35,517 nt of DNA from Bigelowiella natans CCMP2755 (taxonomy: Eukaryota; Protista; Cercozoa). Below, piece after piece: positions 48 to 23,340 of the stretch (within the stretch, counting starts at the first letter, position 1; the number at the start of each line of letters is the position of its first letter). Under the pieces are notes generated by a model, which was not told the DNA's origin, ran no database searches, and saw only the letters and a list, made by a program, of their open reading frames with translations. A program made the position numbers and the translations under genes. The DNA lies in NCBI GenBank assembly GCA_000320545.1, contig ADNK01002422.1:1-35517 (forward strand). The letters run 5' to 3'.

Positions 48-246
48 ATCTGCAAGATAAGGAGATGTCGCGCGTGGGATTTTGGTCTCAATTGAGCCCC
101 GTTCGGTTTCTCACGCCCCTGCCCTCTATGAAAGCGCATGTTGACTATGCGAGGGGTACCTTTGCCGCGGTCCGAGCTGTGGGGGGGGTAGAGCGGTGGC
201 TAGGTGCGTTTGGCCAGTGCTTGATGTGAATCGTGCGTGTGTGCGC

Positions 247-280
<34 letters not shown>

Positions 281-365
281 TTCGCGCAATCTGCTTGATG
301 CATGTCGCTTTTCGATTTTTTTGGCGTTTTCCGAGCTTAGCTGGTTTCAGCTCGTGCGAAACTAA

Positions 366-405
<40 letters not shown>

Positions 406-1511: not shown

Positions 1512-2825
1512 CTAGAATTCATCGTCTTCGTCTCCCTCATCAAACTCCTCGACTTCATAATCTTCTTCAGCAATAACTTCATACCCGTGCTTGGTGAATA
1601 CAGCCTGCACTTCTTTCGAGCTCTTAGAAGCTCTAACGAAAGCGGGGTATCCGTCGTCGTCTACTATGTCATTCACATCGTCCTTCTTGCTATTCTTGAG
1701 CAAGATCTCAAGGCATTTTGCATGCCCATTCTCCACCGCTGGGTGTAGTCCATATCCTGGGTCAGCCCCCCGGTTGATAAGCTCATCGATTTTCGAATCC
1801 TCCCCCTTTGCAGCGGCTGCTTTCAGCTCCTCGCACATGGCCTGAAAGTCGTCTTCGCTCATCATTTTGTACCCGTGTTTCTCGAATGTAGCGTGGAATT
1901 GCTTAAACGGGAAGAGCTTGACGAAAATTGGGACCCCTGGGTCGACCCTGCTGTGGAGAACGTCTATCTCTGACATCTCCTCCAACAGATGATCAATGCA
2001 CTCGATGCAGCGATCCACTAAAGGCCCTTCCGAGCTCTCGCTGATGACAGGCCGGAGGCAATGGAAAATTGCTACTTTTCCATCGACGGCATATCCCGTC
2101 GGGTCTGCGCCTTTCTTGATGAGACTTTCCACCAGCTCTGGCTTAAGTTTGGAACAAGCATCACAAAGCTCTCTACTCAGGCCCTCCACGCGCGCCTGCT
2201 CCTTCGTGTCTTCGCCTTCCTTCTTCGCTTTCGCGAGGGCGGACTTGGCAGCGCTGAGAGTATCCCACACAAACTCCCAGCGACGCTTGTTGAATTCTTT
2301 CCATGTTACTGGTGTTTTCCGAACCGTTCCCTTCCACGGATTGGGGTTGTCACTGCTTTTTACGTCTCCAGGGGTCCTCAGAGCCAAATACGCGACTTTT
2401 TGAATGTCCGCTCCGTCGTCATCCTTTGCCACGATCTCACTGGGCTGCATGTACGGTGCGAGTATTTTGGCGCAGTCCCAAGCTTTGGTCCTGATTGCGT
2501 GCAGTAGCAACGTCCCATCGCTAGAGCCCAGCTTGCATTTTCTGCTGTAGTCCCTCTTCTTCACGCAAGCCTCCAGACACAGTTTCAGGCAATCAGGATC
2601 ATGGTCGTTAACGCACATCTCTGTCACGTTGAAGCTACGGCAAGCTTTTAGCGGTGTGAGAGCGTTCGCTCCTTTAGCGAGCAGGTCCTTGAATTTCTTC
2701 AATTCTTCGTCCATTTTCCCCTGAAACTTCGCTCTGTCTTCGGTCAACCTGCTTTTGTATTTCTGGCGAGCAGACTGAGCGGTGCACAGGGCAGCGTCGA
2801 GCTTCTTGTCATCAAGGTCGGTCAT
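1512..2825 (-). CDS. Intronless ankyrin-repeat-containing protein (437 aa from the ATG at 2825) with an acidic C-tail
   Basis: Ankyrin-like motifs DGTLLLHAIRTKAWDCAKIL, LVESLIKKGADP..DGKVAIFH, ELINRGADP.YGLHPAVENGHAKCLEILLK, DDDGYPAFVRA. The first in-frame ATG is at 2825 (MTDLDDKK); TAG stop at 1512-1514. Confidence 0.8.
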   Translation of the reverse strand: MTDLDDKKLDAALCTAQSARQKYKSRLTEDRAKFQGKMDEELKKFKDLLAKGANALTPLKACRSFNVTEMCVNDHDPDCLKLCLEACVKKRDYSRKCKLGSSDGTLLLHAIRTKAWDCAKILAPYMQPSEIVAKDDDGADIQKVAYLALRTPGDVKSSDNPNPWKGTVRKTPVTWKEFNKRRWEFVWDTLSAAKSALAKAKKEGEDTKEQARVEGLSRELCDACSKLKPELVESLIKKGADPTGYAVDGKVAIFHCLRPVISESSEGPLVDRCIECIDHLLEEMSEIDVLHSRVDPGVPIFVKLFPFKQFHATFEKHGYKMMSEDDFQAMCEELKAAAAKGEDSKIDELINRGADPGYGLHPAVENGHAKCLEILLKNSKKDDVNDIVDDDGYPAFVRASKSSKEVQAVFTKHGYEVIAEEDYEVEEFDEGDEDDEF

Positions 2826-5588
2826 CGCTGAACCGGCGATTGGGTGGTTTGGTGTACGTGGGATGGAGACGGCGGTGTCTACGAGCTCTGTGTCCTCCCG
2901 AAAATATCTTCTGTACAAGGTGTATCTATCTTATCTTGCGGGTAGGTAGGTAGGGGTAGGCGTACCTCACAGCGAACGCGACGAATTGAAAAAGCCAATC
3001 GTTTTCTTCCCTGCGACAAGCAAGCATCCATGTCGCATGTCCTTGTCATTTTCGGGGATCTTCTAACGTGGAGATGCTCCAGAGACTACCCCAGCTGGCG
3101 ATCAACACAATTGAGGAATCCGAGGCATCCTTTTACGAGGTGCGACATCGACTTTGTGATTTCGTATCAGCATATTGCCGGGGATTTTTATTTCCTAAGT
3201 TTCCCTTTGATGGGTTTGACAGCTGCCGCTTTCAAAGGAGCACCTCCCTGCCTCGACTTCTTTCTCCCCCTTCGGTTTTCCCTTCCCAGCTTGACAGAGA
3301 AGGACGGGACTCCGGAGTTGCACCGCTTGCAGATTGGGCACGGACAGGTTCCTCAAGACGGAGGATATGGGGTCTAAACGACGAGGTTCCGTTTCATGTA
3401 ACACCTTGCTTGTACATTTGAAAAAGTCACTTCGTCGCATGCCACGCTCGCAGCGGAGCTGCTACCTTTGAGCAACTCTTCCGAATGAACTCAAAATTCG
3501 ACACAAGATCTCGCGTTCATCTCACTATCTAACTGCTCTCCATGCTTCCTCGAAATATAGAGTACTTGTGTTGAGAGTCGTCTTTTTCCTTGTTGGTGAT
3601 GCTGTTCTCTTTACTCTCTACTTACCACATCTTGTGCTCCTAGTACTAGAGTGCGTCGAGCTGGACACACGGCACAGCTATTTTTCGCTAGATCCTATCA
3701 AAAGTGTACCTCCGATGCCGAGGTTGGTTTAAAGAGTGAGATGCCCGCCGTTTATTACCCGAATTGTGAAAGAGTTATTCGCCTTTCGATGTCACTCGAT
3801 AATATGATTTTGATATAAATATTATGAGAGAATAACATGACAATAATGAATAGATTGATCAGCGCGATCCATGAAACATGATCGTGTTTCCCTATGCTGT
3901 AATCACGATTAGGATCCCGTACTGCCTGGAAGGCGATAAAAATATTCGCGTCATTAATTTGAGGTTGTGTTGGAAGGCATGCATGCAATACATTGTACTC
4001 ATAATTTTTGTATGTCTTGGAATAGCTTTCTTCTTTTTCTGGTTTACGTAGTAATAGGACAATGCAACTTTTAGTAAGTTACATGCCCTCATTAGTGGGA
4101 AGGACGAATAAGTTTTTAGAGCATAAGTTGCACCCGTTTGTGAGAGCTAACACATAATCCAGACTAGCAAAAGCGCTCATATCGTACATTGCCCATTACT
4201 TTTGATCATACGTGAAAATTGCATCTGTGCAATGTGACACGATTTGTATGTGTCCAAATCTAGAAATAGACAAATGGTCGCTTGCGTAAGCAAGCAGGTG
4301 AATAGGAATCCAAGATGCGCTTGGTGTCGTGTTGCTTCCGCGCTAGCGTGGCGGACTGTTGCCGACTGCGGGAGTACGTGTCAATTTTTCCTGAGAGCCT
4401 ACATATATATTAGGGCTCTCTGTTTCCCAATATACGTTACGCTCAAAAATGCACTTTACATTTCCAATGATGAGATGCCATCATGCTGCCGGAACGGAAT
4501 GACTACCACACCCCACAAAAAATCCCCTACCACTCGCGGTAGCAAAAATGCCAAAAGAATGCAATTCGTAATTTTGCCCACTGCGGACTTACTGCCGAAC
4601 TATTTTGCTATTTTCTTGACTAGTTGAAATGACGTCGCGTTTGTTTACTGCACGGCGAAGACACTGCTAAACTGGGCTAGTGCGGCTCTCGCGTCGCTAC
4701 GTACAGCACGCATTTATTTGATTTGCAGCTGCAATTCTAGAATGCATGTGCGCGCAACTACTAGACTAGCTTGGAAACCCCACACAAGTGCGCACACACA
4801 TTGTAGCAACCACATGCACAAGCTCTCTAGCTCTGTTGTTAGTCTGGGATGAACATTTGCTGTGTCTAAATGTGTTTCACTAGTTCAGAGGGCACACAGA
4901 ACGAAGCGCACAGGAATGTTCAGGCAGCTAGTGCGTGGCAGAAACGTCTACTTGACAACACGCAAGCTAGAGCTTGGCTCACTGTGCTTGCATCAAATCG
5001 GCTGCGACCTGCTGGCTAGCTGCTAGCTGGTGCATGATCCTACGTACCGTTTGGCTGCTAAACATATCCGCTGCTAGCTAGTTAGCTACATATATCACAG
5101 ATCATGCTGCATCGGCAAGTCATTATAGTCACTAGTCAAGCCGGCTACGCTTAGCTAGCTAGCTGGCGACTCTGTCAGCGGCTGCCATAATAATGTACAA
5201 ATGCACTAGGTCACTGGACATGACTAGATAATTCTAGCCAAGCTGCTGGCGTAGCTAGCGTAGCCGCACTACTAGCAGTAGATAGCGCATGTCCCATGTT
5301 GAACACTAGAATACTATGCCAAATAAACGCAAAAATCGAATCAAACATTGCCATCAATCCAGTCTTACGGCATGCTGTACATGGTGTTCAAGGAGTCCAG
5401 GGACTTAGGTGCTATATTTATGGCAGTATTGATTAGCGCCTTGCAAAATATGAGCAGGTACTTATGCAACTGCAACCATACACATCATTGCATATCTTCC
5501 GCCACACCTTGCGAATTACAGCGAACGTAACCATTATAGGTCTCAGCGGCTATCATTCTAGTTTACACTGTCGTAGCATCTTCAACTG

Positions 5589-7320: not shown

Positions 7321-9060
7321 TTCGTTTGGAAAAGTGCGGTTTCGATGTTCCCCGAAGATTCCTGCAAAAAAGGATCAGAGATGCCGCTCTAGCGCTTGCG
7401 AAATCGAGCAGAGTCGATCTGCTAGCTGGAGGCCGAGAGATCTCATTCATTCATCCCGGACATCCACCTGCGGCATCGCAAACTCGAAGAGGAAGAAAAA
7501 TGATGGGACGGATGAGAAGAAACAGAGAACGGTTGTGGAGAATGACGAACTAGCGAAGAAAGTGACGTTGAGGACAAGGAGGAAGACGAAGAGGAAGCCA
7601 CCGCTCTGCGATGCATGAACTCTGGAGCTCTGCTTGCACTGGCGTGGCACGGTTCAAGCAACACATGACAGCCCGCCAGAATCATCAGAACGAGACTCCC
7701 TAGCTAGCTAGCTCCTCTGAGAGGACTTGGACTGCTCTGGTGCTGGACTGCAGACTGCCAGACACAACCCTCTGGCTAGCTGGCCATGGCTGGCTAGCTG
7801 GACTGCTAGACTGGTGGAGCCGAGTTTGAAAAGCCCGAACCTGTTTCACACATGAAAGGCACACTTCTCCAGCTAGCTAGCTAGCTAGGTCTAGGCGCAG
7901 ACCCACCACAACTGCATCAATCCCGGTGACGAGTGGGTTTTGAACAAACTGTGCTTTGCGCGTGCGGCCTGGCGCGCTCAATCGTTGCAATTGGACATTG
8001 GAAGCACACTGGAGCCTGTTTGAGGTTCAAATTTGATTTTTTTTTCGAATTTCAGCTTGAAAACCTCACTTTTCAACGCCTGCCAGCGGGCGAAAATTGA
8101 AAAATTCTCACCACTTTTGAACACGCTGGCGCATTTGCATTTGTGTGCCACAAGTTTTGCAAGCTCATGAGGGTGTGCACACACTAGCTTCATGGACGTG
8201 CGAAGTTTCAGCACACGCACACGCAAAAAGCATGCACCTGGGCGCACATGAACGCGCAAAGCTGTGCTCAATGACTCTTGATGAAAAATTCATGCCATTC
8301 GATGACAGACACAGCAATGCACAATGCATGTTGTGATGACAGAAACAGCAATGTACAACACACATCATGCACATGGTGCATTGCATGTCCATCATTTCGT
8401 TGCCCATTTGATGCAGTTGTGACTAGCTAGCTAGCTAGCTCCAGAGCTAGCTAGCCAGAGACGTCGAGGACGTCGACGGCGCAAGCTAGCAAGCTAGCAA
8501 GCTCAACCGCGCACTCCAGCACAGCACGCTCCATTGCTAGCACTGGAGTATTCTGGCATTGCGCTTGTGCACGTTGTTCTCACCAGCCAGCCCTAGCTAG
8601 CTAGAGCCATGCAGCTAGCCAGTCTAGCAGTCCACTCCACAAGCCCATCTCTAGATCTAGCCATTTGGCCAGCTCCCGCCAGCGCTCCAGATCAGCAAAG
8701 CAGTGGATCTAGCTAGCTAGCTAACGTCAGTGCGCATGTCTAGATGTGCACACAAACCGCAATTTCAAAAAAACACCAGCACGAAACCTAGCTGCCGTGT
8801 TCTAATGTTGCAGAAAATGCACATTTCTAGATTTGAATGCACATGCTGCATGCACTCATTCCTAGAATTGTCGAATCGCAATGATGTCAGACAACATAGG
8901 CGTTTCACCAATGGTAGATCGCAAAACCAACATTTGTACATTTGGCAACACTCGAAGTTCGCGATGAGGATTCTAGCTTGTTGCAAATTCCAACATGATG
9001 TTGTGGCGAAGAATTTCCACACCTACTCTTGCCTAAAATTACTAGATTGGTTTACAGTGA
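7321..9060. other. TpA-depleted, CTAG-enriched degenerate intergenic island (probably mutated repeat/TE relic)
   Basis: Manual count over 7321-8353: 15 TpA, all inside CTAG. (CTAG)n arrays with CTGG/CCAG variants; CpG retained. Confidence 0.85.
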
Positions 9061-9069
9061 CCTCTAGTT

Positions 9070-12000
9070 CTAATCCACTGGCACAAAATCTCTATCGGAG
9101 TTCTGGGACTTCACTCGTGTGAAAGGGGGTCGTGGCCTCATTGAAAGCGGAGGGGGACTCCTCTTAGCACGAGAAACTGGAGCCTTTCGAGAAGGAAGAG
9201 CGGGAGCCTTTCGCGCGGGAAGAGGCGGCGGAGATCTAGCCGAAGTATACTGACGCTTATTGCCAGCTGTATTTGAATGACCTGCTATTTCGAGGTAAAA
9301 ACTATACTTATGCATTTCAATGTAAAAGGTCTTTCTTTTATGATGAGTACCTAATGGTCCTGTGCTGTCAGAATCAATATTATGAAGAGATCCCATCTCC
9401 GACAAGATGTTCCCAGCACTAAGGTCGTTGAGCGACCCCTTGCTGTTGGCATCTCTATCAATGGAAGATGACATACGTGACACCAAATCTCCGGCTTGAT
9501 GCATTATCTTCATGTCAGCATTTTTGCCGAAGTTGCGGTTAAAACTATTGATAGATAAAAGTACGATTAGTTAGGTGACATCCAAAATACTAAATTAGAA
9601 TTCGAAAGTTATCAGACTCGGCAACGCGCTGCTCAGTTTCCTTCTTCTGCTTGTACCATCGTAAAAAACAATATGCACCTAATTTATCAAGACATTCACT
9701 CATTATTTTCGAAGGCTCCGCACAATTTAAATAAGTTTATTGCTACCCAATACAATACAAACAAGAGCCACAAATCCTCCAACGACCCCGCCAATCGTCG
9801 GAGCCATGTCGGTCTCTCCAGACGATCCAGATGAATTATCAAAGGGTCTCAGAATCCTTCACATTTATTAATATCAAGTAAAATATAATGCGTAATGCAT
9901 ATATATAAAAAAAATAGAATTTGTAATTCGCATACGTCGGAGAGACGGTCGGGGAAAACGTAGTAGAGACAATAACATTCTCAGTCCTACCGCCGAAGTC
10001 AAAGCTGGACGATCCTATTGCATGGGTAAGGTAAAGTCGCCATATGAAAATCCATTTTATAAACGCGAAACATTTACATATTTACATATAAGACAAACTT
10101 AAAACATTTATGATTTTTTCCAGCTTCACGGCTGACGGATTACTTCCACATCGATAAACAATATTCACCTTTGATGGTATGGTATTGAATTGCGTCCTCG
10201 GATCCTACCGCCCAGATGAACTAAGACAATTTGTAAATTGAAACTTGTGTAAAACTTCTCCTGATGCTATATATAGGCCTAGAATATTGTATGATTTTAT
10301 TTTTTTGAGAATTAATTTTGACCAAGGTCTCATCTTCAGTGTTATAGGAGTTGAAGTCAAGCACGAGTGGACGTATATACGAGATGTTCGTTATTCCGCC
10401 AATTTCCGTGCAGGACAAGTCCGTGTACAGGTCACTCAGATCACTACTTTCGAAAATTCCGCTGACGCTTTGAGAGAATAAGTTTAAGCTTTAGACAGAA
10501 GAAACACCTAGCGTTTGGAAACAGTCGCATTTTAGTGGAACTTGTTTGCCGATGCTCGTGGAATGTATCAACCATCGCTGGAGCAATACGCGAAGTCAGA
10601 GTGCGCCCCAACCATCTGAGCTTGGGTTTGAGATCTAGAAACGCCGAATCCTATGTAACCGAGCGTCCGTGCAGTGAATTTCATTGAAATGCTGGTGCCT
10701 GACAACCACGCCATGATTTGAATATTATCCTGCATCTTGATCCATCATTCAATCCTCTTTACTAGTATTCATAGGGAGGAATAATACTCACCGTCGTGGG
10801 ACCAGAACATGGTCAGATCAGATGCCAACTCTATACTGCAGCTATATGAATTGGGCTGAAGATCGAAAACTAGACAACCTGGCCAATGAGGAACATAGAA
10901 TCTGTACTTTGCAGAAGTTACAAAGAATGCACATTCATTAAAACTTACGATCGGCAAGTGGCACAGGCGCAAAAGTTGGTGCAAGCCCTAGCTGGACTAC
11001 ATTGTCGGTTCCTCCCCCAAAGCTAATGACAGTGGTTCCTAAGTAGCGATAACACCCGATGATGCGTCTTCTCTTGATTGGAATGTATTAGTGTCAAATG
11101 TCGACCAGAAAAAATGTGGCGTTGCAACAAATCATCTCCATCATCGCCGATAGCCCAAACCACCTAAAACCAGTATTTCATTCGCATTCGACGAACAATT
11201 CTGAGAAGGAATGTATCATTATCAACTTACATTTTGTGGTGTCAGATCGATAGGATTGTCAGTGTCGGAAAGAAACCGCTGGAATTTGATAGTCGTAACC
11301 CTTTATATCCATCATATGAAGCTATGCTTAGTTTATACACCTATGCACTTCACACAAAATGCTACACACCCATTCAACTCAGTGCACGAAACGCCCGTGT
11401 AGTCAATATTATTGTTGACAAGTCCTCTGACGTCCGTTTGGGTGAGCTTGTAGTTAGCGATTATAGCTTGGCCTTTTTCCCAGAGCATAAAGACAATGAA
11501 GACAGTAGATGATTAGCAGGAATATTAGAGTAAGGAATATTTCCTTTTAGACAATTTATTTGTTGCTAGTTTGCAGGTAAGAAGCTCTAACCGTCACTAC
11601 TGCACCAAGCATAATCAGCGTCCGACGGAATCATTGTAGCCGGTGATGTTGGGGAAATGCCCAACCCTAGCCATCCTGATATTATACAGAACGTACAGAA
11701 CGTGGTATTAAACGTGCTTTTCACCATAGGCTAGTGCTACATACCAGTTGTGCGTCCTACAAATTGCATTGATATACGGCTCCCTTTCAAAATAATACAA
11801 TAACACACATATTCATTAATTTTTATGAAAACATACTGAAGGTGTATAGGCTTGAAACGTTTAAATGAATATCACACAATAACTGGTGGAGAAAATGTTA
11901 TTTATTCAGATTAAAGTTGAAAGTTTGTGTCAGTTACCATCATGCGACCAGAAGACTTGGAATGTAGACGTTAGAGACACTGCACATCGGTAAGTTGCGC

Positions 12001-15000
12001 CGCTCAGATCCGTTGAGAAGCAATTTGCACCAGTAGGAGAGGATGGGAATGGCGTGGGGGGCATGGATTGGTCTGGGATCTGCTTATTTGCAACCGGAAT
12101 ATGCGAAAGTCAGCAAACACTTAATACTAAAAACCAGATTGATCAGAGTGAAATTCATTCGTACATACATTGCGTTTTAATTTTTGCCAAAACAATATCG
12201 AATTGTCCCTAGATTCACTAGAAAAGTTTCGACGTTTAGATGGCGCCTAACCTCAATGACTGGAGTTGGAAATGTAGTTGGACGCAGTGTGGGAAGTACA
12301 CTAGTTGGCTCATTCGTCGGTGGGAGGGTGTCCTGCGGCATTTCTGCTGCAGCCTGAAGTTCTCCCCATTCAGGAAGCTCGCCTGTGCAATCTAAACAGT
12401 CCTCGGAAAGGAACCTATTATTCATACATGATGATATACAGTTGTTCTTTCATCGGCGATTTGTTCAGAGTGCTGATGATCTATCAAACTGATATTATCA
12501 GTACCAGTTGCGGCTGCTTTCAACATTTATCGATCTCGCGCTTGATGGCAAGTTATCCTTAAAAACATAAAAAGGGATAATCAACTAGCTAGCATCGGAC
12601 AAAGAATTACGATACGCTGAAGAATTATTCATCATTTTCGCATTAATTATTACATGTCGAATACCATATAGCTTGCACAATCCAAACAGAATCCGTTGAA
12701 CTCCCATCGAGGTGGTGGAGGGTTAAGCGGTTCAGGTAGAGGCAAAAACTCAACCTGCAATAAAGTTTATAATTGAATAGTTCATCAAGCATTAGCAACG
12801 CTGCGAATCTGGGAGCTTTAGTCGATTACCCGCTCAACCAGTGTCCAACACGTCGAATAGAATATTGGATCCTTCACAAGGTCAAACACAAAGAGAATGA
12901 TTAATTCTTTTGTTTGAGAATAATTATCAAAAGGAATCTCGGGACATTCTGCATAGATAAATTGGTATGCCTTTACCTCTGGATCTGCGACGATGAGATA
13001 CTCCGGTAGCGTACGAGTTGGTTGACCTATATTTTCAGGTTCACAACGAAGCTTTCGAAGATAATCTCGGATTGACTCTGCAATTTGCTAACATAAATAT
13101 CATCAACTTACGTGCTTCAACTCCGTAACAGACCCGTGGGATATTTTCGCCGTCCCCCGACATAACAGCTTGAGTTGCCTCTTGGGCACCCGGTATCTAA
13201 AGGTATTACATGAATACGATTGATGTAGACATGAGAACTTCCACATATTTTTGAAATGTAAAAAACCTGAGACCGGTACACATTGATGTCTAAAATCGGC
13301 AAGAATCGATTATTTCCTCGGGCCCGAACGCGTATATATTGTCCTAATGCATATTATATAAAACGAAGCCTTAGTCAACGCCCAATGCTTTGGAAAATGA
13401 AGTACCAGTCTGGCCACCACAGTCAACTTGCAACCCGCATATATTTTCAGAGTACTGTAACAAATAGCGCGAGAAAGGGTTAGAAAATGGATGCAAACAG
13501 AGGCCAAAGAAACAAGTACCCGATCTTGCTGGCAGGTAATGGCGGAATCGATGATACCGCACGTTACTTCCTGTTCCTGGTCGGGACAACTAGTACAGAA
13601 TATCAGATAAATCTTTTGAAAACTCTAAATATGATGAAATGTGGGAAGTTACTCTTGTCCAGAACATGGCGTATTCGAGAGAGAAACAGTCACACCGCCG
13701 TTAAGGAACCTCCCCCAAGCCTATTGAGCAATTGGACACAATTAGATAGGAAAATATATAGACGGCGTCCTGTAAAGGGAAAAGTGGTTAATGCCTGTGT
13801 TGCTCCTTCGGTAAGTCTTCCCTGATTGCCCAATGGAGCAGTCCCAGAGAAGACATCGACGAAGAGATCTAATAGATGTTCCACAGAAGTTATAACGACC
13901 AAGGCTGCCTCTCATTACGAATAAATTCTTAATACCATATTGGTTGGCATTTCTAATCTCAGAGTAATAACTGAGGCCCTCATAGTGACAAACAGGCCTT
14001 TGATTCTAGAACAAATGCACATCAGAGAGTTGATACTATTTGCAGCGGATATCTTCATACCTGGAAGAACCAATACATTGCGCAGTCTAATAAATCAGTA
14101 TTCGTCTCTTTCCTCCCTTCTGGGTACCTCCCTACGTGTAGCGTGGATGGATTATTCAAATAATCGTTTACTCCTCTTACATGGTCGGCTAATACTAGCA
14201 CTGTATTAGATAAATTTGTTACCAAGTTCGAAATCTAGAGCTCCAGGGATTCGTATCGATACAATACCCACGGGGGCAGTAGGATCATCCTTGGGATTAA
14301 CAATAGAGTTTCAGGATTGAATCGTGAGAGAATAAAAATCTGTGCGGTCTAATTGACACATCAGAGGCGCACGTCCAATAATGAGCTACCAGGGTGACTT
14401 GAGACCAAGCCTCTTGCGCTGGAAAAGCAACTGGAACCCATGCCAATGGCATCGCGCTCATTAAATAATCAATTCTTAGCCTACCAGTTATGATAACATT
14501 AATATCACTCCAAGGTTGACACGACGCATTAAATCAGATGATAAGATCAAGTGTGTTTGTATTCTGTCTCACACCAATGAAGGTCAGGACAAATGGCCTC
14601 CTTACCGTCTTCGGACTAACAAAGTAGAGATAGTTGGAAATGAGGGGTTACTGACCAATCAAACCTCTCGTTGCTTTTAAAGCAACTTAGTCATCTAGAA
14701 CTAAACTCACCCCAACGTTAATGAGTACGCCGAACTCTCCAGTCATTGTTGAGATGGTAAACTTCCCATCCGTCACTTCAATTGTATGTGTCTATGGAAA
14801 GCAAACGTTATAAAAAACCAAATTTTAAGTGTATGTTAGGCGAGTAATTGACTAATCTTCAGCAAAGCAATATGAATCTGGCATTCAGTGATATGCATTG
14901 TGGACATATGGTCGGCCGAACCTTTGCGGCATTATTCTGTCTTGCACGACGAGTATGGACTCTAGCATTTTCAAAAATACATCCAGTTATTCTAGCTTGG

Positions 15001-15333
15001 CCAGCGGCTCCCTGTTCAAAGAACCATTTTCCCTCATTCAATTGAATAAATCATTTTGAATCTATTATAGCTTAACGTACCGAAAAATGCGTGATTTGGT
15101 AAACACCGTTTGGTAACTAATTTTATCGTTTTCGAATCAGAGTCCATTGTGATTAGTACAACTAAATCCTTTAGGGTTAGAACTTGAAAAGATACATCAA
15201 CTTCCCAGATTTGTGGCTGGTTGGCACCGCAACGGTTTCTCCTAGCCCAATTCAGTAGGCCTGCCTATTGTACAATATTCAAGCACAGAAACGTATACAA
15301 AGTAATACTTTCACGTAACAGACATACATTGAG

Positions 15334-15374
<41 letters not shown>

Positions 15375-18300
15375 GTACATACACACACACACATACAGAC
15401 ACATATATAAATGTAAACGTATTATATATGGTCTATTCATATTAGTATACAAGCGGATATTTACTACTGAAATTATAAAACAAATATAGACGTTACCCCT
15501 GTTCTTTCTGGAGTTGCGCCATGAGTTACAATATTCTACATTGAGGAAACAGAATAATTCTCATACAACTGATTAAATAAAAAACTGGCATTGTGTCTTC
15601 ACCGGTTCGAAGTTGCTCTGTAATATTTGATCATTTGCTTGACATCTCCATCCATATTGCACAGTTCCATCGTAAGGAGCTACTCCGCCTCTTCCGACTC
15701 CTCCAGGCCATGGCGTCGTTCCCGTTTGAGCTAAATGTGTAGTGTTTAGAAAATAAAGTATTCAACCAAGATTCCGATCGAAATGTGTGACTAAGCAAAA
15801 TTACGATATGCTTTTCCAGTATCGACGATAAATCCGGGAGGCGTTGTCTCAACTCCGTTATAGTTCTCGGGACGGAAATCGAAAAACAGAGTGAACTGTG
15901 GTCCTCCCACCGGGTGCGTAGAGTTTCCTTTTTTCAATCAGTAGTCATCAGATTGGATTGTCTGTAACAGTCTTTTAAACCAGTTCAAATCGGCAGAAGA
16001 GTTACAAAATCGATTATCATTCTAATTCCATTCAAACCTCTAGCCCAGTTCTGTGGGTTCTGAAACCTAAGATGAAGGGGAACCATGGAGTAGCCTTAAG
16101 TGTCTGACATCTTTTGATAAATATCGAAATTGTATACATGCTAATAATGGTATCATATCAGGCTATTTATTTATACACTCGTGCTTGATCATTCTACGTA
16201 CTCTTGATCTTGAGCTTGATTGATTACTCTTCGCTCGAAGACAATCCAATTTGAATCGATCCTATCGTTATAACCCTCTCGGCATGTCTTGAACCTCCAG
16301 CTGATAAAATAAGATGCACACAAGCAAAAATCATTGAACATGTGTGGTGTTCGATATTTAGCGGTGAATAATGTTACATGTTCGGTTCCCTGATCATTCG
16401 CTGCAAATCGGCAACGTTGCTTGGATCGACATCTTGGCCATGCTCCCAGTTTATTCCTCTATGTTAAAAGAAGACCATGATGAGACCGAGTGCCGTCTTC
16501 ACGGACGGGCATGGTATTAATATACGGAGGTTATTCGCATTACACGCAGGTTGGGTCTCCATTGCAAGTGGCTATCGCAGATACAAAAGTATCCCTTGCT
16601 TGAACAGAGCTTAGTAGAAAGGAACAGCAGATTATCGGATACAAACTATATCAATAATTGAAAACACAGGCCTACTTGCGACACTCAATTCCGGGTCTTG
16701 TAGTCTACATGGTTAATGAACTCAATATCAAATAATGGAACTCAACAACTGTGTGACTATAGGCTGAAGAAAATATGACCGAAATCCAAGTAAGTATATC
16801 GTAATCCGAGTGTGTCAAACTATTTGGCGAGGTTAGCCTCATCATCCTAGGTTCGATATATCAAATTACAATTATAATATACTCTAAGAGTACTTGGCAC
16901 TAAGAAAAAAACATTACGGAGAATTTAATGCGATGTCGATATGATCGCGAGGCCATTCAATAACTGCCATCCATCGTATAAATATCAAGAACCTCTGTGA
17001 GGAATAATCGAACGTACTATATTCTCTTTAGAGCAACGTGAATAGCATAGTCAATAAACTTAAGGAATAAGAATATTATAGATTTCATGCATATGTAATC
17101 GGCATACCGTCTGTTTCTGATATCTCGTACTCAAAGCTTGTTGGTAGCGCAACCTTTATAGAATAAATACGTGCAAAGAATATACTCAATATCTCTCAAC
17201 TCTCGCACCCATTTTTTTCATTATTTAGATTACCTCATCCCTTATTGAAGACAAAACAGAATTGGGATTCACAATCGGAACAGCATTTATCCCCTTAAAT
17301 CAAAGCATATGATTTAGAACATAAATCTTTTTTCTCGGAATGAGTTTTTTGGATTTCTACCAAAAGACCAACGCTGCGTATGTTCTCAACACCACTGCCT
17401 GCTGCCACTTGAACATTTGCAAGACACTCCGAAATCTGATAATTAGTATTTTCGTAAGCATTGCTCGTACGATCTAGGTTAGAATTCTATATACAGTATC
17501 CGTGGCGTTGTATATTCCTGATGTAAATCCTTGCGGCTGAACAAAACATAGAGAAGTTTATATCTTCATATATCACGATATTATAACCACTATGCTCTCT
17601 GTTATTTGCAGATTACATATTATTTGAAAATAAAATACATGCTCACCTGTATGAACTGGCAGTGATCAAGGCGGTTGATGTCAAATACTAGAAATGCGAA
17701 AATGATTTAAGAACGAATATTGAGATTGAATTTCAATGTAAGAAATACCCCCGGCCTGCAAGACTCCATAGATATCACTTTCCGGAATGATGGTGCTTTG
17801 CGGATGGACGTTTACCTTTCAATATTAATAGCATTTTTATTAAATAATAGGACAGTAATGATTATATTTGAATTCCTGCTGTACAATAGTTTTTAGAAAC
17901 ATTTCTTACATCAATGGCGTCGTAGTAGCCATTCCATATCCAATGTACAATGTAATGATTTCCTTTGTTCTGAGAGCAATATTGATTGCTAAGATCAAGG
18001 GAGATTTCAAATGATAACAGCAATTTCCCCTAAATCCCTTGAATGGGAATTTAAACTCAAAGAGGACATATTATTCCCAATCAGAAATAATATTTAGTTG
18101 CAAATTCAGGTAATCGAACCGGCTGCAGAGGGATACTCAGACACACAATGTCTTCATCTTGAGGAGCATGGTACAAATTTGGATACTGCATGGCCCCTAC
18201 AATCCAAGGATACTGAAAAATTAAAAGGTAATGCTTTAGCAAAGAATGCTAACTTATGAATAATCTACTAGATTCAAGTTTACATTGTCGTTTTGATAGA

Positions 18301-20586
18301 AAGTATAGATATCATTTGAGCGAGCTTGTGCCGTGTATGAAGTCACCGTCGGAACAGGGAAGGCGCCTTGAATCGTTAAGGTGTCAGTATAGTCACATGG
18401 CTATAATCAGATTATGCTCAATGTTTCAGCCAAAACACACTTACCGTGGTTGCAGTATAAAGAGTCAGAAGGTTGCACCTATGATAGAAGCAACTCATTC
18501 TCTATTCTCGATTTTGAATCAATAGAAACATACTTCGTTTCCATAGATACTCTCAGAGCAACTTGAGCTCGCACAGAAGTGGTATCGAGGGTGCATATCT
18601 TGCTCATTATTGGCTCCAGCAGAAGCTAAGTAATCCCGAACCATGTCGAGGTAATTATTTTGGAATGCATAGTGCTCGTCCTGGTAGTTTTTAATTTGAT
18701 AACAAAGAGAAAAAACCAAAACCCAACATGATGGAACGATAGTTAGTTACAGAAGTAATATGTAAGCAATGACTTTTTCACCACGCTGAATATGCAATCT
18801 CGTTTGGAGAGTACATTCATGTTCCCACATATATGAGTGCTATAAATGCTATTATCAACGGCTTCATATTTTTTTGTTGCTATACAAAATATCATGTTGT
18901 ATCACTTGGCCGGAGAAAATGACAATATAGTGCGTTCGGCCATGCCCAGTAGCGAATTTCATAGCAAACTCTTGGCCACTGCTGACTTGAACATGCGTAT
19001 CGGTCGTGCGTCGCTGATTGAACGGATAGGTGGTGGATGCACCCATGTCAGCTCGTCCAGGAACCTAAGAAATGATAAGATGTGAACGCATTTATCCTGA
19101 ATGCAATAATTATGTATATGCTACAAACTATCAATTGAAAATGCCAACCCACCTTAAAATGGGCATGCATCACACGGTTGATTTATTATTATCGTAGAAA
19201 TAATTTGGATAATCGATTACCAATATCCAGTTGTGCCCCTTAGCAGATTGAGGAAATATGAACAAACTTATGCAGAGGAAACAAGTAAAGATGCTCATTC
19301 CTGGGAACCATTTCAGCGACAATACTGTGTTGAAATGATGGTGACGATGACGAGAGCTTCTACTCATTCCAGTACCAAATGAATATGATTTGTGGGCTAT
19401 GTAACCGAGAAAACCGAATATGGCAAAAAGGAACCTAATTGGAGCCAATTCGTCAATTCTTTACATTAGGTGAATGATAGCAATTCCACTATCAGTGAAA
19501 AGTTCCATAAAAATAAGTATTTCCTATATCAACGGCTAGATAAATTAAACTCTAAACTCTAAACCTACCCAGCTGCGCTCGTATGAACTGTTTTGGTATT
19601 AGAAATCTTGAAGTTGCGAACCTAGAACAAACGGAAAAAAATTACGAAAATAGCTAAATTACAAAAGAATTGCTGGTGATAAGTAATGAAATGTATACCG
19701 GTGCTCTGAACTTTCTTTTCAACGAATCGACGCCGATTGATGACCGAGGTTCTGTTTGATTTAAAATCCACTTTTCCGAGACTTTTTTTGCAGGCATACT
19801 TAACAGAGCAGGTGCTCCCTGTGATCGATGCAACCAAATAGTTAATAGATTGAAAATTTGTTCAAAGGATAGCACTTTTACCGAATTCGATACGCAGAAG
19901 CAGAAACGTGTTGCATCCGGCTGAACATATGGGAGCAAAGCACCTTTATTTCAAGAATGGCTATAGGCAATTTCGAGTTCATGATATAAAAAATGCTTGT
20001 ATATCAACATAGAGTTCAGAGATTGTTTTACGTGGGAAGCCATGCATGCTGATCTCCGTGAATCGATGTCCTGCTGGGCCGAACAGAGAATAGGAGAAGA
20101 CCCGGAAAATCTATCAACTCCGTTATAGTAGCAAGAGTCTCCCTTCGCAGGAGCCACTGCGGCGCATGATGGTTCGTACGGTAGAGGGCATCCGGTAAGG
20201 CTTTCAAATGTTATTTCCATTCCAGTTGGACTGTTTACTCCCATATCGCGTAGCCCCTTTAAGAGTGAGTGGTCAGAGTGAGTATATTGCTTCTAGTACA
20301 TGTTGCGACCTGGAGGTTGCACTGAGCTCCGATGCTGGCACAAAAATCAGTGCAAGACTGTCCTTTCTCAGCTACAAACCAGAACTTACAAATAGTTATA
20401 TTAGGCTTCGAGGGTCTTTTTGGGAGGTAAAAATAATAATGACCTCGTTGGTAGGTGCAACCACGTTCTCGGTGAGGCGCAACTGTTTCAGTATGCGGCC
20501 AGGATATCTGCAATAATTACATTAGTTTGGAAACTTTACATGTATAGCTCAAAGTTCTCTAAGATGTTGAAACGTGTGCTAGTTAT

Positions 20587-20628
<42 letters not shown>

Positions 20629-21875
20629 TTAGAAACATCGAATATAAGAATCTAACCCGCCGATAGGTATCAGTCCTTGGTTCTCCATATAGCCAAAGTT
20701 AAGATCCATTCCATTTGGATAGTAAAAGAAGCCTGCCGCAGTATCACAGAATGATTGTATTGAGCGCAATTCACCTTTTTGACATAAGTACTTACCGTCA
20801 TTTGCAGGGCCAACTTTGATAAGGGCATGGAAATCAATGGTGCCTGTGCCAGCAGGAGGGGCCTGTACGATAATATTGTAACTTAGGAACCAAGAAGTAT
20901 TTACAATTAGTACAGTACCTGAAATCGAAATTCAGTTCTCAGAGGTTTGAGATCTCCCTGCGCATGCATTATGCACTCCCGATTCTGGGTGGGAGTGAAA
21001 AACGTCCGTCCTTGCTGATCTAATGGACAAAACTTTAGTCTTGGATAAAAGGAAGTTCGCAAATATTCTCAGAATAACCATTTCCGGTTGTTCGCCATTG
21101 TCCAACAAGAAATCCATCTAATAGCAGTTTTATTACTTAGCGAAGTAGCGAAGTGATCGATCTTAATGCAACTTAGGAATATTTCACCGCTGTCCTGAGC
21201 CTGGAGCGCAAGACCTCTGTACTTCATCGCGTAAAGTCGAACCTAGAATCAACTTGTTCAATACTACTTCAACAAAAAATGCCAAGTCTTTGTACTTCTA
21301 AGATGACTGTGAGCCACTCGCCGGGCGTGTACGTTGTCTTATCATCCTATGAGCATATTTGGTTAATCCCTTCTACAACAATAACATAATTTTTTTCATA
21401 CTTCTTTGAAACGAAGCTGGAACATGTCTGTATAAACTGGTCTGGCACTCTAAAATATTATGGTTCTTAATATTTATTTCAAATGAAGTGTAACACTGAG
21501 ACCAAACCCATGGCATATTTTTCCCTTGGTCACTGCAATCTAGATGATTGTAAGCCCGCACTGGATCATTATTTCGACTGATGGGAACATAACTCAGCAA
21601 TTTCGATACACATGACATGCACCATTCTCATGCGCGACCTGTACGAAGAGATACTGCAGCCAATGTTGTATTCGGTAGGTCTTACTTGCCAACAGCTCGG
21701 ATTTAATTCATCACCAATGAGACCGCTTGAAGCTCCATCTTAATTTAGTACCATCAATTATTTGTAAACATCTAACTACATAAGTTCATTTTTAGTGAAA
21801 TGAATGCTTCTCACCTACGCCTACAAGTCCAACCAAGAACGCGAATCCAACTGCTATCCGTTCCGTTCCCGTCAT
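9070..21875 (-). CDS. Giant multi-exon (about 75 exons) cell-surface polyprotein: SP, Reeler, Cys module, TM, internal signal peptide, LPMO-like His-brace domain, PAN/CBM/F-lectin-like modules, 2x DOMON, TM, Pro-rich tail
   Basis: ATG at 21875 (MTGTERIAVGFAFLVGLVGV, signal-like), then a chain of GT-AG exons spliced in frame by hand to TAG at 9070-9072. A few junctions around 13450-13750 and 15000-15500 were not fully resolved. One in-frame TAA at 10491-10493. Confidence 0.8.
9660..9805 (-). other. C-terminal transmembrane helix of the giant protein
   Basis: IGGVVGGFVALVCIVL-GAYCFL followed by the basic stop-transfer RWYKQKK. Confidence 0.8.
10000..10880 (-). other. DOMON domain 2 with putative heme ligands Met (10615-10613) and His (10181-10179)
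   Basis: YSCSIELASDLTMFWSHDG-TSISMKFTARTLGYIGFGVS....QMVGA...ITNISYIR...FIWAVG...QYH; several intron positions are shared with DOMON1. Confidence 0.85.
11020..12040 (-). other. DOMON domain 1 with putative heme ligands Met (11634-11632) and His (11118-11116)
   Basis: YRCAVSLTSTFQVFWSHDG-SRISMQFVGRTTG-WLGLGISPTSPATMIPSD..W...TTIKFQR...VVWAIG...QRH. Confidence 0.85.
13268..14330 (-). other. F-type-lectin/discoidin-like module (divergent)
   Basis: GVTVSLSNTPC...VTCG...VDCGGQT-GQYIRVRARGNNRFLPILDINVY resembles the fucolectin/FTP C-terminal pattern xCxxxxGrYvxv......LxlxEvxVy. Confidence 0.5.
14710..15930 (-). other. Galactose-binding-like/malectin-type CBM module
   Basis: FFDFRPE..PPGFIVDTGKAY...YGW...IWE..LPNGVYQIT...IEVTDGKFTIS motifs. 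Confidence 0.55.
17800..19235 (-). other. LPMO-like (histidine-brace) copper domain starting at the His codon 19235-19233
   Basis: SAKG/HNWIL-VPGRA...GQEFAMKFATGH(46)GRTHYIVI ... VCLSIPLQP-NKGNHYIVHWIWNGYYDAID-VNV. The final strands parallel the AA10 pattern xPxxxGxHvIxxxW...FYxxxDVn. Confidence 0.65.
19882..20388 (-). other. Cys-rich module resembling the MGAT5/GnT-V C-terminal domain
   Basis: WFVAEKGQSCTDFCASIGAQC...C..SC...P....CYY...SACMASH-PDATRFCFC compared with the MGAT5-type pattern GQSCxxxC...LxC ... SCAGxHPxxxRxCPC. Confidence 0.55.
20720..21440 (-). other. Reeler domain exons of the giant gene
   Basis: Spliced TYTPGEWLTVILE-VRLYAMKYRGLALQAQDS-DGFLVGQW...ECIMHAQGDLKP..EFRFQ-APPAGTGTIDFHALIK matches the Reeler pattern YxPG..V....xGxxLQA..vG.w..C..H....K....APxxGxGxxxFxA. 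Confidence 0.8.
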
Positions 21876-21959
21876 TATCCTGAATCTGTTTCGTGAATGG
21901 CAGTTAGCCTGTGCACTCAAAGGAAGCCAGGTGCAGTTTACTGTGCTTCTGAAAATTAG

Positions 21960-23340
21960 ACACGCGAGTTTTGTTTTCGATCGGTTGTGTTGCCAACAAA
22001 AGAGTGGCCATGCGGCGTTTCATGCGCGTTTTTCCCTTGTCGCGCACAGAATACGGCCTTGTCCTGCCTCGAAATTCATCAAATGCTAGAGGTTTTGTTG
22101 TGCTGCTAGATCAGAAAAAACCGTGCCTCGCACTCATCCAGTTGCGACCGTTAGACTCGAATCGTTTCTTGGTATCTTGTCGCGAACGATGAATTCAGGC
22201 TGGTTTTGCAGCGACGTAGCAGCCTACCAGCAAGTGCAGACAACTTCTGGAAGTGTGCAGTGGGTTGGTGGGCTTGTCGCAGAGGCAAGCGCTGTTGCCA
22301 GAGGCAGTTTTGCATCGATGCTTCACTCATTGTTCACTCTTCATTGTTCATTGCCAGCAATGGAATCCTTTTTTCACGAGTTGGCATGCACTTCAAGCAA
22401 GCTGTTTCACTTGTTCTGTGGAGGTTTGTTCATCGTTAGCAGGAATCCACTCCCAGAGCTCACGCACGAGGTCACGATGGTGTGAACTGGGATCCTTTCA
22501 ACTACTTCCTGTGGAATTGCATCACTTGTTCCATCAACTCACTCATTTGTCGACTTGCTCGCTTCTCTCGTGCTGGCGTGTCGTTGCATTGACTCGTTCG
22601 TGACACGCAACACCGCGTGCAACCACGTCATTGTTCACTTCCAGCAAACAACGCGTTTGAAGACACTGCATGCACTCATTCTGATCTGGCACTCGTTCGC
22701 TCGGTTGTTCACATTGATTGTGATGACTTTCCGTGCATCCTTGTGAAAACATGGCGATTTGGCAGTGCCAGAGTGTGCGGGCCAGCGGCCCCCAACTTCA
22801 CCAGAACATGCCTGCTTGCAAACTGGCACAAGCCCTCCAGCCAGGCACTGCGCCTTCCATGCTGCGCTGACAATGCGTGCCCGAACAGAACAAGCACAAG
22901 ACCAGTTCACGCTGGCACGCTGGCACGCGCGCCAGTCTAGCAGTGGGGAAGATGGAATTTGCTCAAGAAAAGCCAATGCCACACGGCGAGAGATGCAGTG
23001 CTGAGGCGGCACAATCTACTAGTCTAGACAATGTGGCACAATCCGACAATCTCTAGAATCTAGCAATGGTGGGAATGCGTCTTGCATGCTGTGCCATGCT
23101 AGCATGCATGGACGCATGTCCATTGTGCATGAGCGCACAAACCCGTCTCGCACGTGCGTCCACAGGCGTGTAGGACGATCTTCTTCAGATGTTCACTGCA
23201 TGAACCATATTGCACAGTCACAATTTTGTGCAAGCAAGGCACAGCTGTTTTGCCGCAATCTAGACACCATCGATGTGCAGAGTTGCATTAGCACAAAATT
23301 GCTCGAAACGATGTTACCACAGAAGCGACAAAGATCGGAA
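21960..23340. other. Second strongly TpA-depleted intergenic island
   Basis: Between about 22505 and 23016 only one TpA was found, inside CTAG (about 22937-22940). CA/TG-rich; CpG present. Confidence 0.8.

What the first reader, a model, noticed from the sequence alone, without database searches (positions are those of the whole stretch)
9070..21875. Membrane-tethered polyprotein joining an LPMO-like copper domain to two heme-type DOMON cytochromes and several lectin modules
Seen: one hand-spliced frame gives SP, Reeler, Cys module, TM, signal-like helix, HNW... domain, PAN/CBM/F-lectin-like modules, P/T linker, DOMON x2, TM and a cytosolic PxxPxR tail. Established: LPMOs need an external electron donor, which in fungi is often the Met/His heme-b DOMON-fold cytochrome of cellobiose dehydrogenase (AA8). 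Reeler plus DOMON also co-occur in FRRS1/SDR2 ferric reductases. Inference: a self-contained surface oxidative machine (bind glycan, relay electrons, cleave) coupled to cytoskeletal or endocytic signalling, plausibly used on prey or substrate walls by an amoeboid mixotroph. I do not recall this architecture being described.
Basis: partly seen in the sequence, partly recalled or inferred. Interest (0 to 1): 0.92.

Follow-up and report, generated by a model that had tools for sequence, protein, structure and literature searches.

The report
Protist membrane precursor: His-brace-like domain plus DOMONs
This is one real, expressed, roughly 66-exon gene of the alga Bigelowiella natans. Its protein carries a mid-chain signal peptide placed to expose an N-terminal histidine of a copper-enzyme-like (LPMO-like) domain, tied to sugar-binding modules and two probably heme-binding DOMON domains; I found this arrangement described nowhere, and its chemistry is untested.

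Summary
Window 21875-9070 (minus strand) is one gene of Bigelowiella natans. It is already modelled, imperfectly, as JGI Bigna1/90151, with no function assigned.

**Transcript.** Spliced transcript contigs of 6.4 and 5.9 kb from two studies run through the core, the P/T linker, both DOMONs, the TM and the tail.

**Mid-chain signal peptide.** Relatives, including two B. natans paralogs, Lotharella, Amorphochlora and a choanoflagellate, share the order Reeler, Cys module, TM, second signal peptide, 'HNW' domain. A signal-peptidase site sits directly before the histidine in 40 of 40 sequences.

**Domain identities.**
- No LPMO sequence model matches it, and the His-brace geometry could not be measured.
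- The Reeler, DOMON (with Met/His at heme spacing), F-lectin-like and galactose-binding-like modules are supported. 'PAN' is not.

**Caveat.** The assembled RNA isoform has an in-frame stop inside DOMON2.

**Second fusion.** A paralog on another contig also joins the core to a DOMON. The scan noted that one separately (s1-746094).

**Verdict.** A new variant of His-brace proteins. Its function is inferred only.

The parts
8965..21975 (-). Whole transcription unit. CDS 21875-9070; poly(A) site near 8965; the 5' end is estimated.
   Evidence: P0042 mapping. Spliced RNA contigs and poly-T loose ends at 8965.
21814..21875 (-). Exon 1: start codon and N-terminal signal peptide.
   Evidence: Sequence read. 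Collinear with the signal peptides of P0037, P0038 and P0039.
20794..21340 (-). Exons of the Reeler domain.
   Evidence: tblastn to paralogs at 56-72% identity. Pfam Reeler in P0023 and P0050. Foldseek to the F-spondin reeler domain, E 5.5e-11, on the paralog model.
19882..20384 (-). Conserved Cys-rich module.
   Evidence: Nearly invariant Cys columns in A3. Weak profile match to the MGAT5 C-terminal region, E 0.03. The JGI model mis-splices its first part.
19221..19433 (-). Single exon encoding TM1, a 32-aa basic loop, the internal signal peptide (19298-19236) and His1-Asn-Trp-Ile-Leu (His codon 19235-19233).
   Evidence: Sequence. Open frame without a stop. The same TM-loop-signal-HNW order occurs in relatives.
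17907..19235 (-). HNW (LPMO-like, putative His-brace) domain, 7 exons. Invariant His46 codon at 18944-18942. C-terminal WxWxGYYDxxDV motif in exon 17969-17907.
   Evidence: Family alignment invariants H1, H29 and H46. AF2 of the paralog domain, pLDDT 87.8. VIA-align hits to X325, AA15, AA10, AA13, AA16, AA11 and AA9.
14574..15728 (-). Galactose-binding-like (YxiM/AGA type) module.
   Evidence: Family profile against PDB 2o14 YxiM, E 5e-4. Weak Pfam AGA-YXIM_GBD hit, E 0.018.
13267..14479 (-). F-type-lectin-like module.
   Evidence: Family profile against PDB 3cqo FBP32, E 1.8e-7.
12252..13196 (-). Conserved Cys-containing end of the family core, then the start of the P/T linker.
   Evidence: Collinear with P0037, P0038 and P0001 up to about residue 1400. 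Exon 12414-12252 is confirmed by RNA.
10949..12079 (-). End of the P/T linker and DOMON 1. RNA-confirmed exons: 12079-11938, 11783-11745, 11675-11592 (Met), 11472-11370, 11300-11231, 11163-11106 (His), 11038-10949.
   Evidence: Pfam DOMON 3.1e-12 on P0042. Joints and phases. Protein-language-model neighbours are DOMON clusters at 0.95.
9936..10878 (-). DOMON 2. Exons: 10878-10792, 10698-10573 (Met), 10507 or 10467 to 10323, 10220-10169 (His), 10014-9936.
   Evidence: Internal repeat of DOMON 1, E 2e-10. Exon-level DOMON hit, E 0.075. RNA joints.
10491..10493 (-). In-frame TAA in the splice form carried by the X1 and X7 contigs.
   Evidence: Exon-by-exon phase check. The JGI junction 10590|10467 avoids it.
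9747..9856 (-). Exon with the C-terminal transmembrane helix.
   Evidence: Hydrophobic stretch followed by basic residues. RNA-confirmed exon.
9070..9678 (-). Cytosolic tail with two PxxPxR motifs and PPLP; stop codon at 9072-9070.
   Evidence: Translation. RNA pieces 9349-9544 and 8917-9279.

Best explanation
**Shown**
- The locus is one expressed gene of Bigelowiella natans, encoding a precursor of about 2,000 aa.
- It belongs to a protist family found in chlorarachniophytes and in at least one choanoflagellate.

**Inferred: processing.** Signal peptidase cuts twice, once after the N-terminal signal peptide and once after an internal one.
- The first product is a Reeler plus Cys-rich ectodomain held in the membrane by a helical hairpin.
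- The second product begins with a free histidine.

**Inferred: second product.** Its first domain is a divergent LPMO-like beta-sandwich that binds copper in a histidine brace (His1 and His46). After it come galactose-binding-like and F-lectin-like modules, a P/T stalk, two b-heme-type DOMON domains, one TM helix and a proline-rich cytosolic tail.

**Proposed mechanism (inference).** The lectin modules hold a glycan at the cell or phagosome surface. The DOMON hemes pass single electrons to the copper centre, as the cytochrome domain of cellobiose dehydrogenase does for fungal LPMOs. The copper site then performs oxidative chemistry on the bound glycan.
For: **One gene**
- P0042 mapping.
- Spliced 6433- and 5879-nt contigs from two studies across core, linker, DOMON1, DOMON2, TM and tail.
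- Word share 0.28 observed against about 0.31 expected for all exons.
- 3'-tag reads at depth about 25 and a poly(A) site near 8965.

**Conserved fusion**
- Transcript-derived proteins P0037 (a B. natans paralog) and P0038 (three Logan RNA contigs) are collinear with P0042 over residues 1-1400.

**Internal signal peptide**
- Position -1 is Ala or Gly, and -3 is a small residue, in 40/40 sequences. His lies more than 150 residues in for 28/40.
- All known His-brace proteins need signal-peptide removal to free the amine (PMC10952591).

**LPMO-like fold**
- AF2 pLDDT 87.8.
- 16 of the top 50 rows are LPMO or LPMO-like chains, and the aligned ranges of most of them start at residue 1 of both chains.
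- Nearest protein-language-model clusters are 'polysaccharide monooxygenase-like' at 0.89 and a haptophyte LPMO_10 cluster at 0.87.
- The strand-TGH-strand element and the C-terminal W..GYYD..DV motif mirror AA10 (from my own knowledge of CBP21).

**DOMON**
- Pfam above cut-off.
- Met-to-His spacing is about 88-89 residues in both copies. The modelled heme pair of HYP1 is M90/H174 (PMC10784544).

**Second fusion**
- The paralog on contig C3480 also has the core, then a DOMON, a stalk and a TM.

**Lectin modules**.
Against: - No LPMO sequence model matches: Pfam LPMO_10 and NCBIfam.
- hhalign against 21 actinobacterial AA10 domains aligns only the C-terminal motif, P 0.016, against 0.18 for a reversed control.
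- Foldseek against the PDB gives nothing below E 0.01.
- I could not read model coordinates, so His1-His46 proximity is unmeasured.
- A third invariant His (H29) could mean a CopC- or PmoB-type binding site rather than a catalytic one.
- DOMONs occur only in the B. natans copies. Other members carry PA14, LamG, a possibly SEA-like segment (my reading only, not tested) or WW modules at that end, so the DOMON is not integral to the family.
- No electron source such as b561 or a flavodomain is in the protein.
- The assembled RNA isoform stops inside DOMON2.
Confidence: 0.55

Rival explanations
1. This is a surface metal-handling system, not a glycan-cleaving enzyme. The His-brace-like domain captures or hands over copper, as X325/Bim1 or CopC do. 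The DOMON hemes act as a cupric or ferric reductase ectodomain, as in CYBDOM or FRRS1, and the Reeler fragment forms part of the same apparatus.
For: - His1-His46 spacing is short, as I recall it being in X325 (not checked here).
- There are three invariant histidines.
- The CYBDOM protein HYP1 reduces ferric and cupric substrates (PMC10784544).
- X325 is implicated in copper transport (PMC10952591).
Against: - The family core always carries lectin- or CBM-type modules (F-lectin-like, galactose-binding-like; PA14 or LamG in relatives), which fits a glycan substrate better.
- There is no b561 or transporter domain.
- DOMONs are absent from most family members.
Confidence: 0.22
2. The main product is not membrane-tethered. 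The dominant splice form ends at the TAA inside DOMON2, giving a secreted protein of HNW, lectin modules and one and a half DOMONs. The TM and tail exons are then translated only from a minor isoform, or not at all.
For: Both RNA contigs (two studies) use donor 10572 and acceptor 10508, and in phase this reads VSSV then TAA. Alternative splicing is reported for B. natans (PMC12730881).
Against: - After that stop the frame stays open through at least the next three RNA-confirmed exons, up to and including the TM exon 9856-9747. The JGI model reads on to the stop at 9072-9070.
- The JGI junction 10590|10467 restores the frame.
- The paralog on C3480 ends DOMON, stalk, TM.
- Contigs keep only one path and drop variants (notes).
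Confidence: 0.15
3. The HNW domain is a metal-free Ig-like adhesion module. On this reading the protein is a lectin-type receptor or adhesin. Its DOMONs bind sugar rather than heme, and its conserved N-terminal His has another role.
For: - Generic beta-sandwich adhesins (MSCRAMMs, pilins) score as well as LPMOs in the fold search.
- There is no sequence-level link to LPMOs.
- Some DOMON-superfamily members bind sugars (cited in PMC10784544).
Against: - Invariance of His at +1 of a conserved signal-peptidase site in 40/40 sequences, plus invariant H46, is hard to explain without a free-amine function.
- LPMO-type chains are about a third of the top 50 rows.
- The DOMONs have the Met/His pair at heme spacing.
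Confidence: 0.08

Closest known systems
AA15/AA10 lytic polysaccharide monooxygenases (e.g. TdAA15A, PDB 5msz; Pfam LPMO_10)
   Same: - Histidine directly after a signal-peptidase site.
- Second His in a strand-loop-strand element.
- C-terminal aromatic-Asp-Val strand motif.
- Appended carbohydrate-binding modules.
   Different: - No HMM match, and only marginal profile-profile similarity.
- Only about 45 residues between the two histidines.
- The signal peptide is internal to a larger precursor.
- The protein is tethered by a TM helix.
- DOMONs are attached.
X325/Bim1 LPMO-like copper proteins (LaX325, PDB 6ibh)
   Same: - Compact His-brace domain.
- Anchored at the cell surface.
   Different: - X325 is a fungal single domain of about 150 aa with a GPI anchor, an Asp fourth ligand and no CBMs.
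- Here the domain heads a multidomain TM protein of about 1,600 aa found in protists.
- The Asp ligand was not assessed.
Cellobiose dehydrogenase cytochrome domain (AA8) as LPMO reductant
   Same: A DOMON-fold module, with a Met/His pair where b-heme is ligated in CDH, lies on a flexible linker next to a putative copper oxidase.
   Different: - In CDH the cytochrome is fused to the electron source (a flavodehydrogenase), not to the LPMO.
- Pfam CDH-cyt does not match here. The domains are classical DOMON (PF03351).
- No electron source is present in the chain.
FRRS1/SDR2 and plant CYBDOM/AIR12 (e.g. HYP1)
   Same: - Reeler and DOMON ectodomains occur in one gene product.
- The DOMON Met/His pair has spacing like HYP1 M90/H174.
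- Cell-surface location.
   Different: - There is no cytochrome b561 membrane domain.
- Reeler and the DOMONs would end up on different cleavage products.
- An LPMO-like domain and lectin modules lie in between.
Polyproteins cut at internal signal peptides (e.g. viral glycoprotein precursors)
   Same: A TM helix, a short cytosolic loop, then a second hydrophobic segment ending in a small-x-small site that would be cut on the luminal side.
   Different: This is a cellular protist gene, and here the purpose of the cut would be to create the metal-binding N-terminus.

Membership tests
LPMO (AA10/AA15, Pfam PF03067) | Mature N-terminus is a histidine freed by signal peptidase. | tested here: met
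   This is a prediction only. A hydrophobic h-region is followed by -3 small and -1 Ala/Gly directly before His in 40/40 family sequences. The window reads SAKG|HNW.
LPMO (AA10/AA15, Pfam PF03067) | Second histidine and axial aromatic residue placed to complete the His brace. | tested here: inconclusive
   H46 is invariant and sits in a strand-loop-strand element. The GYYD motif lies in the last strands. Model coordinates were not readable, so distances were not measured.
LPMO (AA10/AA15, Pfam PF03067) | Match to the family sequence model. | tested here: not met
   - No LPMO_10 hit at E<=1 in P0042, and none at E<=0.01 in seven relatives.
- The window is not hit in the own-genome scan.
- NCBIfam gives nothing.
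- hhalign P 0.016 against 0.18 for the reversed control.
LPMO (AA10/AA15, Pfam PF03067) | LPMO beta-sandwich fold. | tested here: inconclusive
   [not shown]
LPMO (AA10/AA15, Pfam PF03067) | Copper-dependent oxidative cleavage of a polysaccharide. | not testable with these tools
   Needs protein, EPR and product analysis.
X325/Bim1 LPMO-like copper proteins | GPI-anchored single domain. | tested here: not met
   The domain heads a long multidomain chain that ends in a TM helix and a cytosolic tail.
X325/Bim1 LPMO-like copper proteins | Aspartate as fourth copper ligand. | not tested
   No coordinates and no residue-level structural alignment were available.
DOMON (Pfam PF03351) | Match above the gathering score. 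| tested here: met
   - DOMON 1 scores 47.2 bits against a cut-off of 32.7 on P0042.
- DOMON 2 is an internal repeat (E 2e-10) with an exon-level hit at E 0.075.
- Protein-language-model neighbours are DOMON clusters at 0.95.
Heme-b DOMON (AIR12/CYBDOM type) | Met and His axial pair at the conserved positions. | tested here: met
   This is at motif level only. Met lies in exons 11675-11592 and 10698-10573, and His in exons 11163-11106 and 10220-10169. Spacing is about 88-89 residues, against M90/H174 in HYP1. The C3480 paralog also has both.
Heme-b DOMON (AIR12/CYBDOM type) | Binds b-heme. | not testable with these tools
   Needs spectra of the expressed domain.
AA8 (CDH cytochrome, Pfam PF16010) | Match to the CDH-cyt model. 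| tested here: not met
   No CDH-cyt hit at E<=1 on P0042. There is only a low-ranked protein-language-model neighbour at 0.87.
FRRS1/SDR2/CYBDOM ferric reductases | Cytochrome b561 membrane domain. | tested here: not met
   No b561 hit on P0042. There is a single C-terminal TM helix.
Reeler domain (Pfam PF02014) | Family model or fold match. | tested here: met
   - Pfam Reeler in P0023 (1.2e-9) and P0050 (5.9e-6).
- Foldseek to the F-spondin reeler domain at E 5.5e-11, TM 0.73-0.76, on the B. natans paralog.
- The window's exons are collinear with it.
F-type lectin | Homology to a solved F-lectin. | tested here: met
   Family profile against FBP32 (3cqo), E 1.8e-7. The fucose-binding residues were not examined.

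The most novel reading that the evidence does not exclude
A protist-wide family of copper His-brace oxidases is made as the second half of a polyprotein. Signal peptidase cuts in mid-chain to unmask the catalytic N-terminal histidine. In Bigelowiella two paralogs have wired this enzyme covalently to their own b-heme DOMON electron donors. That would be the first LPMO-type enzyme with a built-in cytochrome.
Probability: 0.3. Interest if true: 0.85.

Novelty: new variant of a known kind. Interest (0 to 1): 0.7.

Why it matters
**Biogenesis.** A review of His-brace proteins states that all known ones have N-terminal signal peptides (PMC10952591). A conserved mid-chain signal peptide that creates the metal-binding N-terminus would be a new route to making this class.

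**Electron supply.** How LPMOs obtain electrons in vivo is an open question. A natural fusion of an LPMO-like domain to DOMON cytochromes would give a direct, testable model of intramolecular reduction.

**Distribution.** The family is unannotated and missing from Pfam. It occurs in phagotrophic protists, including a choanoflagellate, so it may point to oxidative handling of prey or surface glycans, or of copper and iron, in lineages where no such enzymes are characterised.

Tried and rejected
**Exon-by-exon and own-genome searches**
- Pfam on about 28 window pieces found nothing useful apart from one weak DOMON hit, because the exons are too short.
- Own-genome scans with LPMO_10 and DOMON did not flag the window.

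**Searches with the database protein or family profile**
- phmmer of P0042 against PDB sequences gave nothing relevant.
- NCBIfam gave nothing.
- A search with the HNW-only profile for short relatives found only fragments of the same family, none labelled LPMO_10.
- P0042 is not on record for contig look-up. The P0002 locus is genomic with introns, so it gave no usable sub-range.

**Structure searches on the HNW model**
- Foldseek against the PDB was not significant.
- The ESM Atlas shape search gave TM below 0.5.

**Profile-profile test**
- I fetched 21 actinobacterial AA10 domains. hhalign gave only a marginal C-terminal match, and global mode gave nothing.

**Complex prediction**
- Complex prediction of the Reeler/Cys ectodomain with the HNW domain returned no verdict, with score 0.00 and an uncertain partner fold. 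This is neither for nor against binding.
- I did not try an HNW-DOMON complex, because no intact referenceable DOMON sequence exists. The JGI model mis-splices both DOMONs.

**Rejected readings**
- Two adjacent genes fused by hand-splicing. I rejected this because TM1, the loop, the signal peptide and His1 share one exon, and transcripts of relatives carry the same fusion.

I used exon references, the database protein P0042 and paralog transcripts instead.

Full report
**What the locus is**

The window is a Bigelowiella natans contig (G000 C1315). A phmmer search with one exon of the 'HNW' domain (window 18906-19064, minus strand) found 36 long proteins. A follow-up search returned P0042, the JGI model Bigna1/90151 (1912 aa). 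P0042 maps at about 100% identity to about 66 exons from 21227 down to 9073.

They are the ATG at 21875 with a signal peptide, then exons starting near 21739, 21549 and 21340. The true protein is therefore about 100 residues longer than the JGI model.

I worked with exon references, the database protein P0042 and transcripts of paralogs.

**RNA evidence**

I laid four runs on 8900-14899, within the 6,000-letter limit.
- A 6433-nt contig (X1) and a 5879-nt contig (X7), from different studies, are spliced at GT..AG introns.
- They run through the end of the family core, the P/T linker, DOMON1, DOMON2, the TM exon and the tail.
- Both continue upstream of 14793 into the exon at 14919.
- 3'-tag reads and poly-T loose ends place the poly(A) site near 8965.

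About 4.4 kb of the X1 contig lies 5' of position 12412. That is what the exons up to about 21.9 kb add up to; this step is inference. Runs X1-X12 hold 0.27-0.28 of the 31-mers of 12000-21900. I calculate about 0.31 if every exon is present.

**A caveat in DOMON2**

In the contig isoform, the exon 10507-10323 read in phase gives four codons and then a TAA at 10493-10491. The same frame then continues.

The JGI junction (donor after 10590, acceptor before 10467) keeps the frame but removes about six residues of a DOMON strand. I could not see which form dominates at read level. Alternative splicing is reported for this genome (PMC12730881).

**The fusion is conserved and transcript-supported**

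- P0037 is an MMETSP transcript that proves to be a B. natans paralog on contig C1624.
- P0038 is carried by three Logan RNA contigs.
- Both are collinear with P0042 over about 1,400 residues, from the Reeler region through the HNW domain to the end of the core.
- Members come from Lotharella globosa, Amorphochlora amoebiformis, B. natans and the choanoflagellate Stephanoeca diplocostata.

**The internal signal peptide**

In the window, one exon (19433-19221) encodes four things in a single open frame:
- a TM helix;
- a 32-residue basic loop;
- a signal-like helix ending SAKG;
- His-Asn-Trp-Ile-Leu.

Across 40 family sequences the residue before the His is Ala (37) or Gly (3), and position -3 is always small. 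In 28 sequences the His lies more than 150 residues into the chain. In others, such as P0002, an ordinary N-terminal signal peptide precedes the same His.

A review states that all known His-brace proteins have N-terminal signal peptides, and that cleavage unmasks the amine that binds copper (PMC10952591). A conserved mid-chain site is therefore the most striking feature here. Cleavage itself remains a prediction.

**The HNW domain**

*Conservation and model.* H1, N2, W3, R9, H29, Q31, H46 and Y75 are invariant or nearly so. AF2 of the paralog's domain (L012:1489-2340) gave mean pLDDT 87.8 and pTM 0.81.

*Fold searches.*
- Foldseek found no significant PDB match.

*Sequence-based tests.*
- Protein-language-model neighbours are 'polysaccharide monooxygenase-like' clusters (0.89) and a haptophyte LPMO_10 cluster (0.87). 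Both are leads only.
- Sequence models do not match.
- My hhalign against 21 actinobacterial AA10 domains aligned only the C-terminal motif, P 0.016 against 0.18 for a reversed control.

*Conclusion.* This is a divergent LPMO-like, probably His-brace domain. It is not a demonstrable member of any CAZy LPMO family. I put a copper His brace at about 0.65 and polysaccharide cleavage at about 0.4.

**Other modules**

- **Reeler.** Pfam hits in relatives. Foldseek of the paralog's N-terminal ectodomain to the F-spondin reeler domain gave E 5.5e-11.
- **Lectin modules.** The family profile hits the F-lectin FBP32 (E 1.8e-7) and the YxiM galactose-binding-like domain (E 5e-4). The Cys module weakly resembles the MGAT5 C-terminal region (E 0.03).
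- **'PAN'** was not verified.
- **DOMON1** passes Pfam's threshold.
- **DOMON2** is its repeat.
- **Met/His pair.** RNA-confirmed exons restore a strand that the JGI model lacks. Both DOMONs then show a Met and a His about 88-89 residues apart. The modelled heme pair in the CYBDOM protein HYP1 is M90/H174.
- CDH-cyt (AA8) and cytochrome b561 are not matched.

**Paralogs**

B. natans has three copies.
- The copy on C3480 also has the core followed by one DOMON with Met and His, a P/T stalk and a TM helix. The DOMON link is therefore not a one-off. The scan noted it separately (s1-746094).
- Other family members end in PA14, LamG, Cys-rich or WW modules, or in a segment that looked SEA-like to me but was not tested. 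The DOMON is therefore a lineage-specific addition.

**Mechanism and alternatives**

The best reading is a surface or phagosomal oxidative enzyme with its own heme relay. A copper or iron handling role (X325-, CYBDOM- or FRRS1-like) is a serious rival. No electron source is present in the chain.

Literature searches for LPMO with DOMON, CYBDOM, Reeler or an internal signal peptide found nothing relevant.

Noticed in passing
window 10467-10590: There are two competing splice pairs in DOMON2. RNA contigs use donor 10572 and acceptor 10508 and read an in-frame TAA at 10493-10491. The JGI model uses donor 10589 and acceptor 10468 and stays in frame.
   Followed up: partly
window 20300-20577, 11162-11200, 10589-10648: The JGI model Bigna1/90151 appears mis-spliced in the Cys module, where it misses the conserved exon near 20384-20310. 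It also appears mis-spliced in both DOMONs, where RNA shows exon 11163-11106 instead of 11200-11162 and exon 10698-10573 instead of 10648-10589. It also lacks about 100 N-terminal residues.
   Followed up: partly
G000:C3480 (L013 5200-9995, L015 354-1663): A third paralog has Reeler, the HNW core, one DOMON with Met/His, a P/T stalk and a TM.
   Followed up: partly
G000:C1624 (L014) = P0037; window 9073-9279: The paralog's cytosolic tail ends in a WW domain, as does the choanoflagellate homolog's. The tail of this gene instead carries PPLP and PxxPxR motifs, which are typical WW and SH3 ligands. The tails might interact; this is speculation.
   Followed up: no
G000:C595:10964-11074 (L001 1324-1599, minus): A separate B. 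natans exon carries an LPMO-type C-terminal motif, with a weak LPMO_10 hit (E 0.12).
   Followed up: no
window 27424-30393 (+): An intron-free 989-aa ORF has a protein kinase domain followed by many leucine-rich repeats (Pfam E 1e-60 and 4e-44).
   Followed up: partly
window 1512-2918 (-): A 468-aa ORF has ankyrin repeats (Pfam Ank_2, E 1.8e-9).
   Followed up: partly
window 126-696, 15300-15450, 20590-20640: Dinucleotide microsatellites (CT/GA, CA/GT, TA) lie at the window start and inside introns of the gene.
   Followed up: no
window 10182-14608: Run X19 (type unknown, unspliced, low depth) differs from the window at seven single bases. It is probably DNA of another strain.
   Followed up: no
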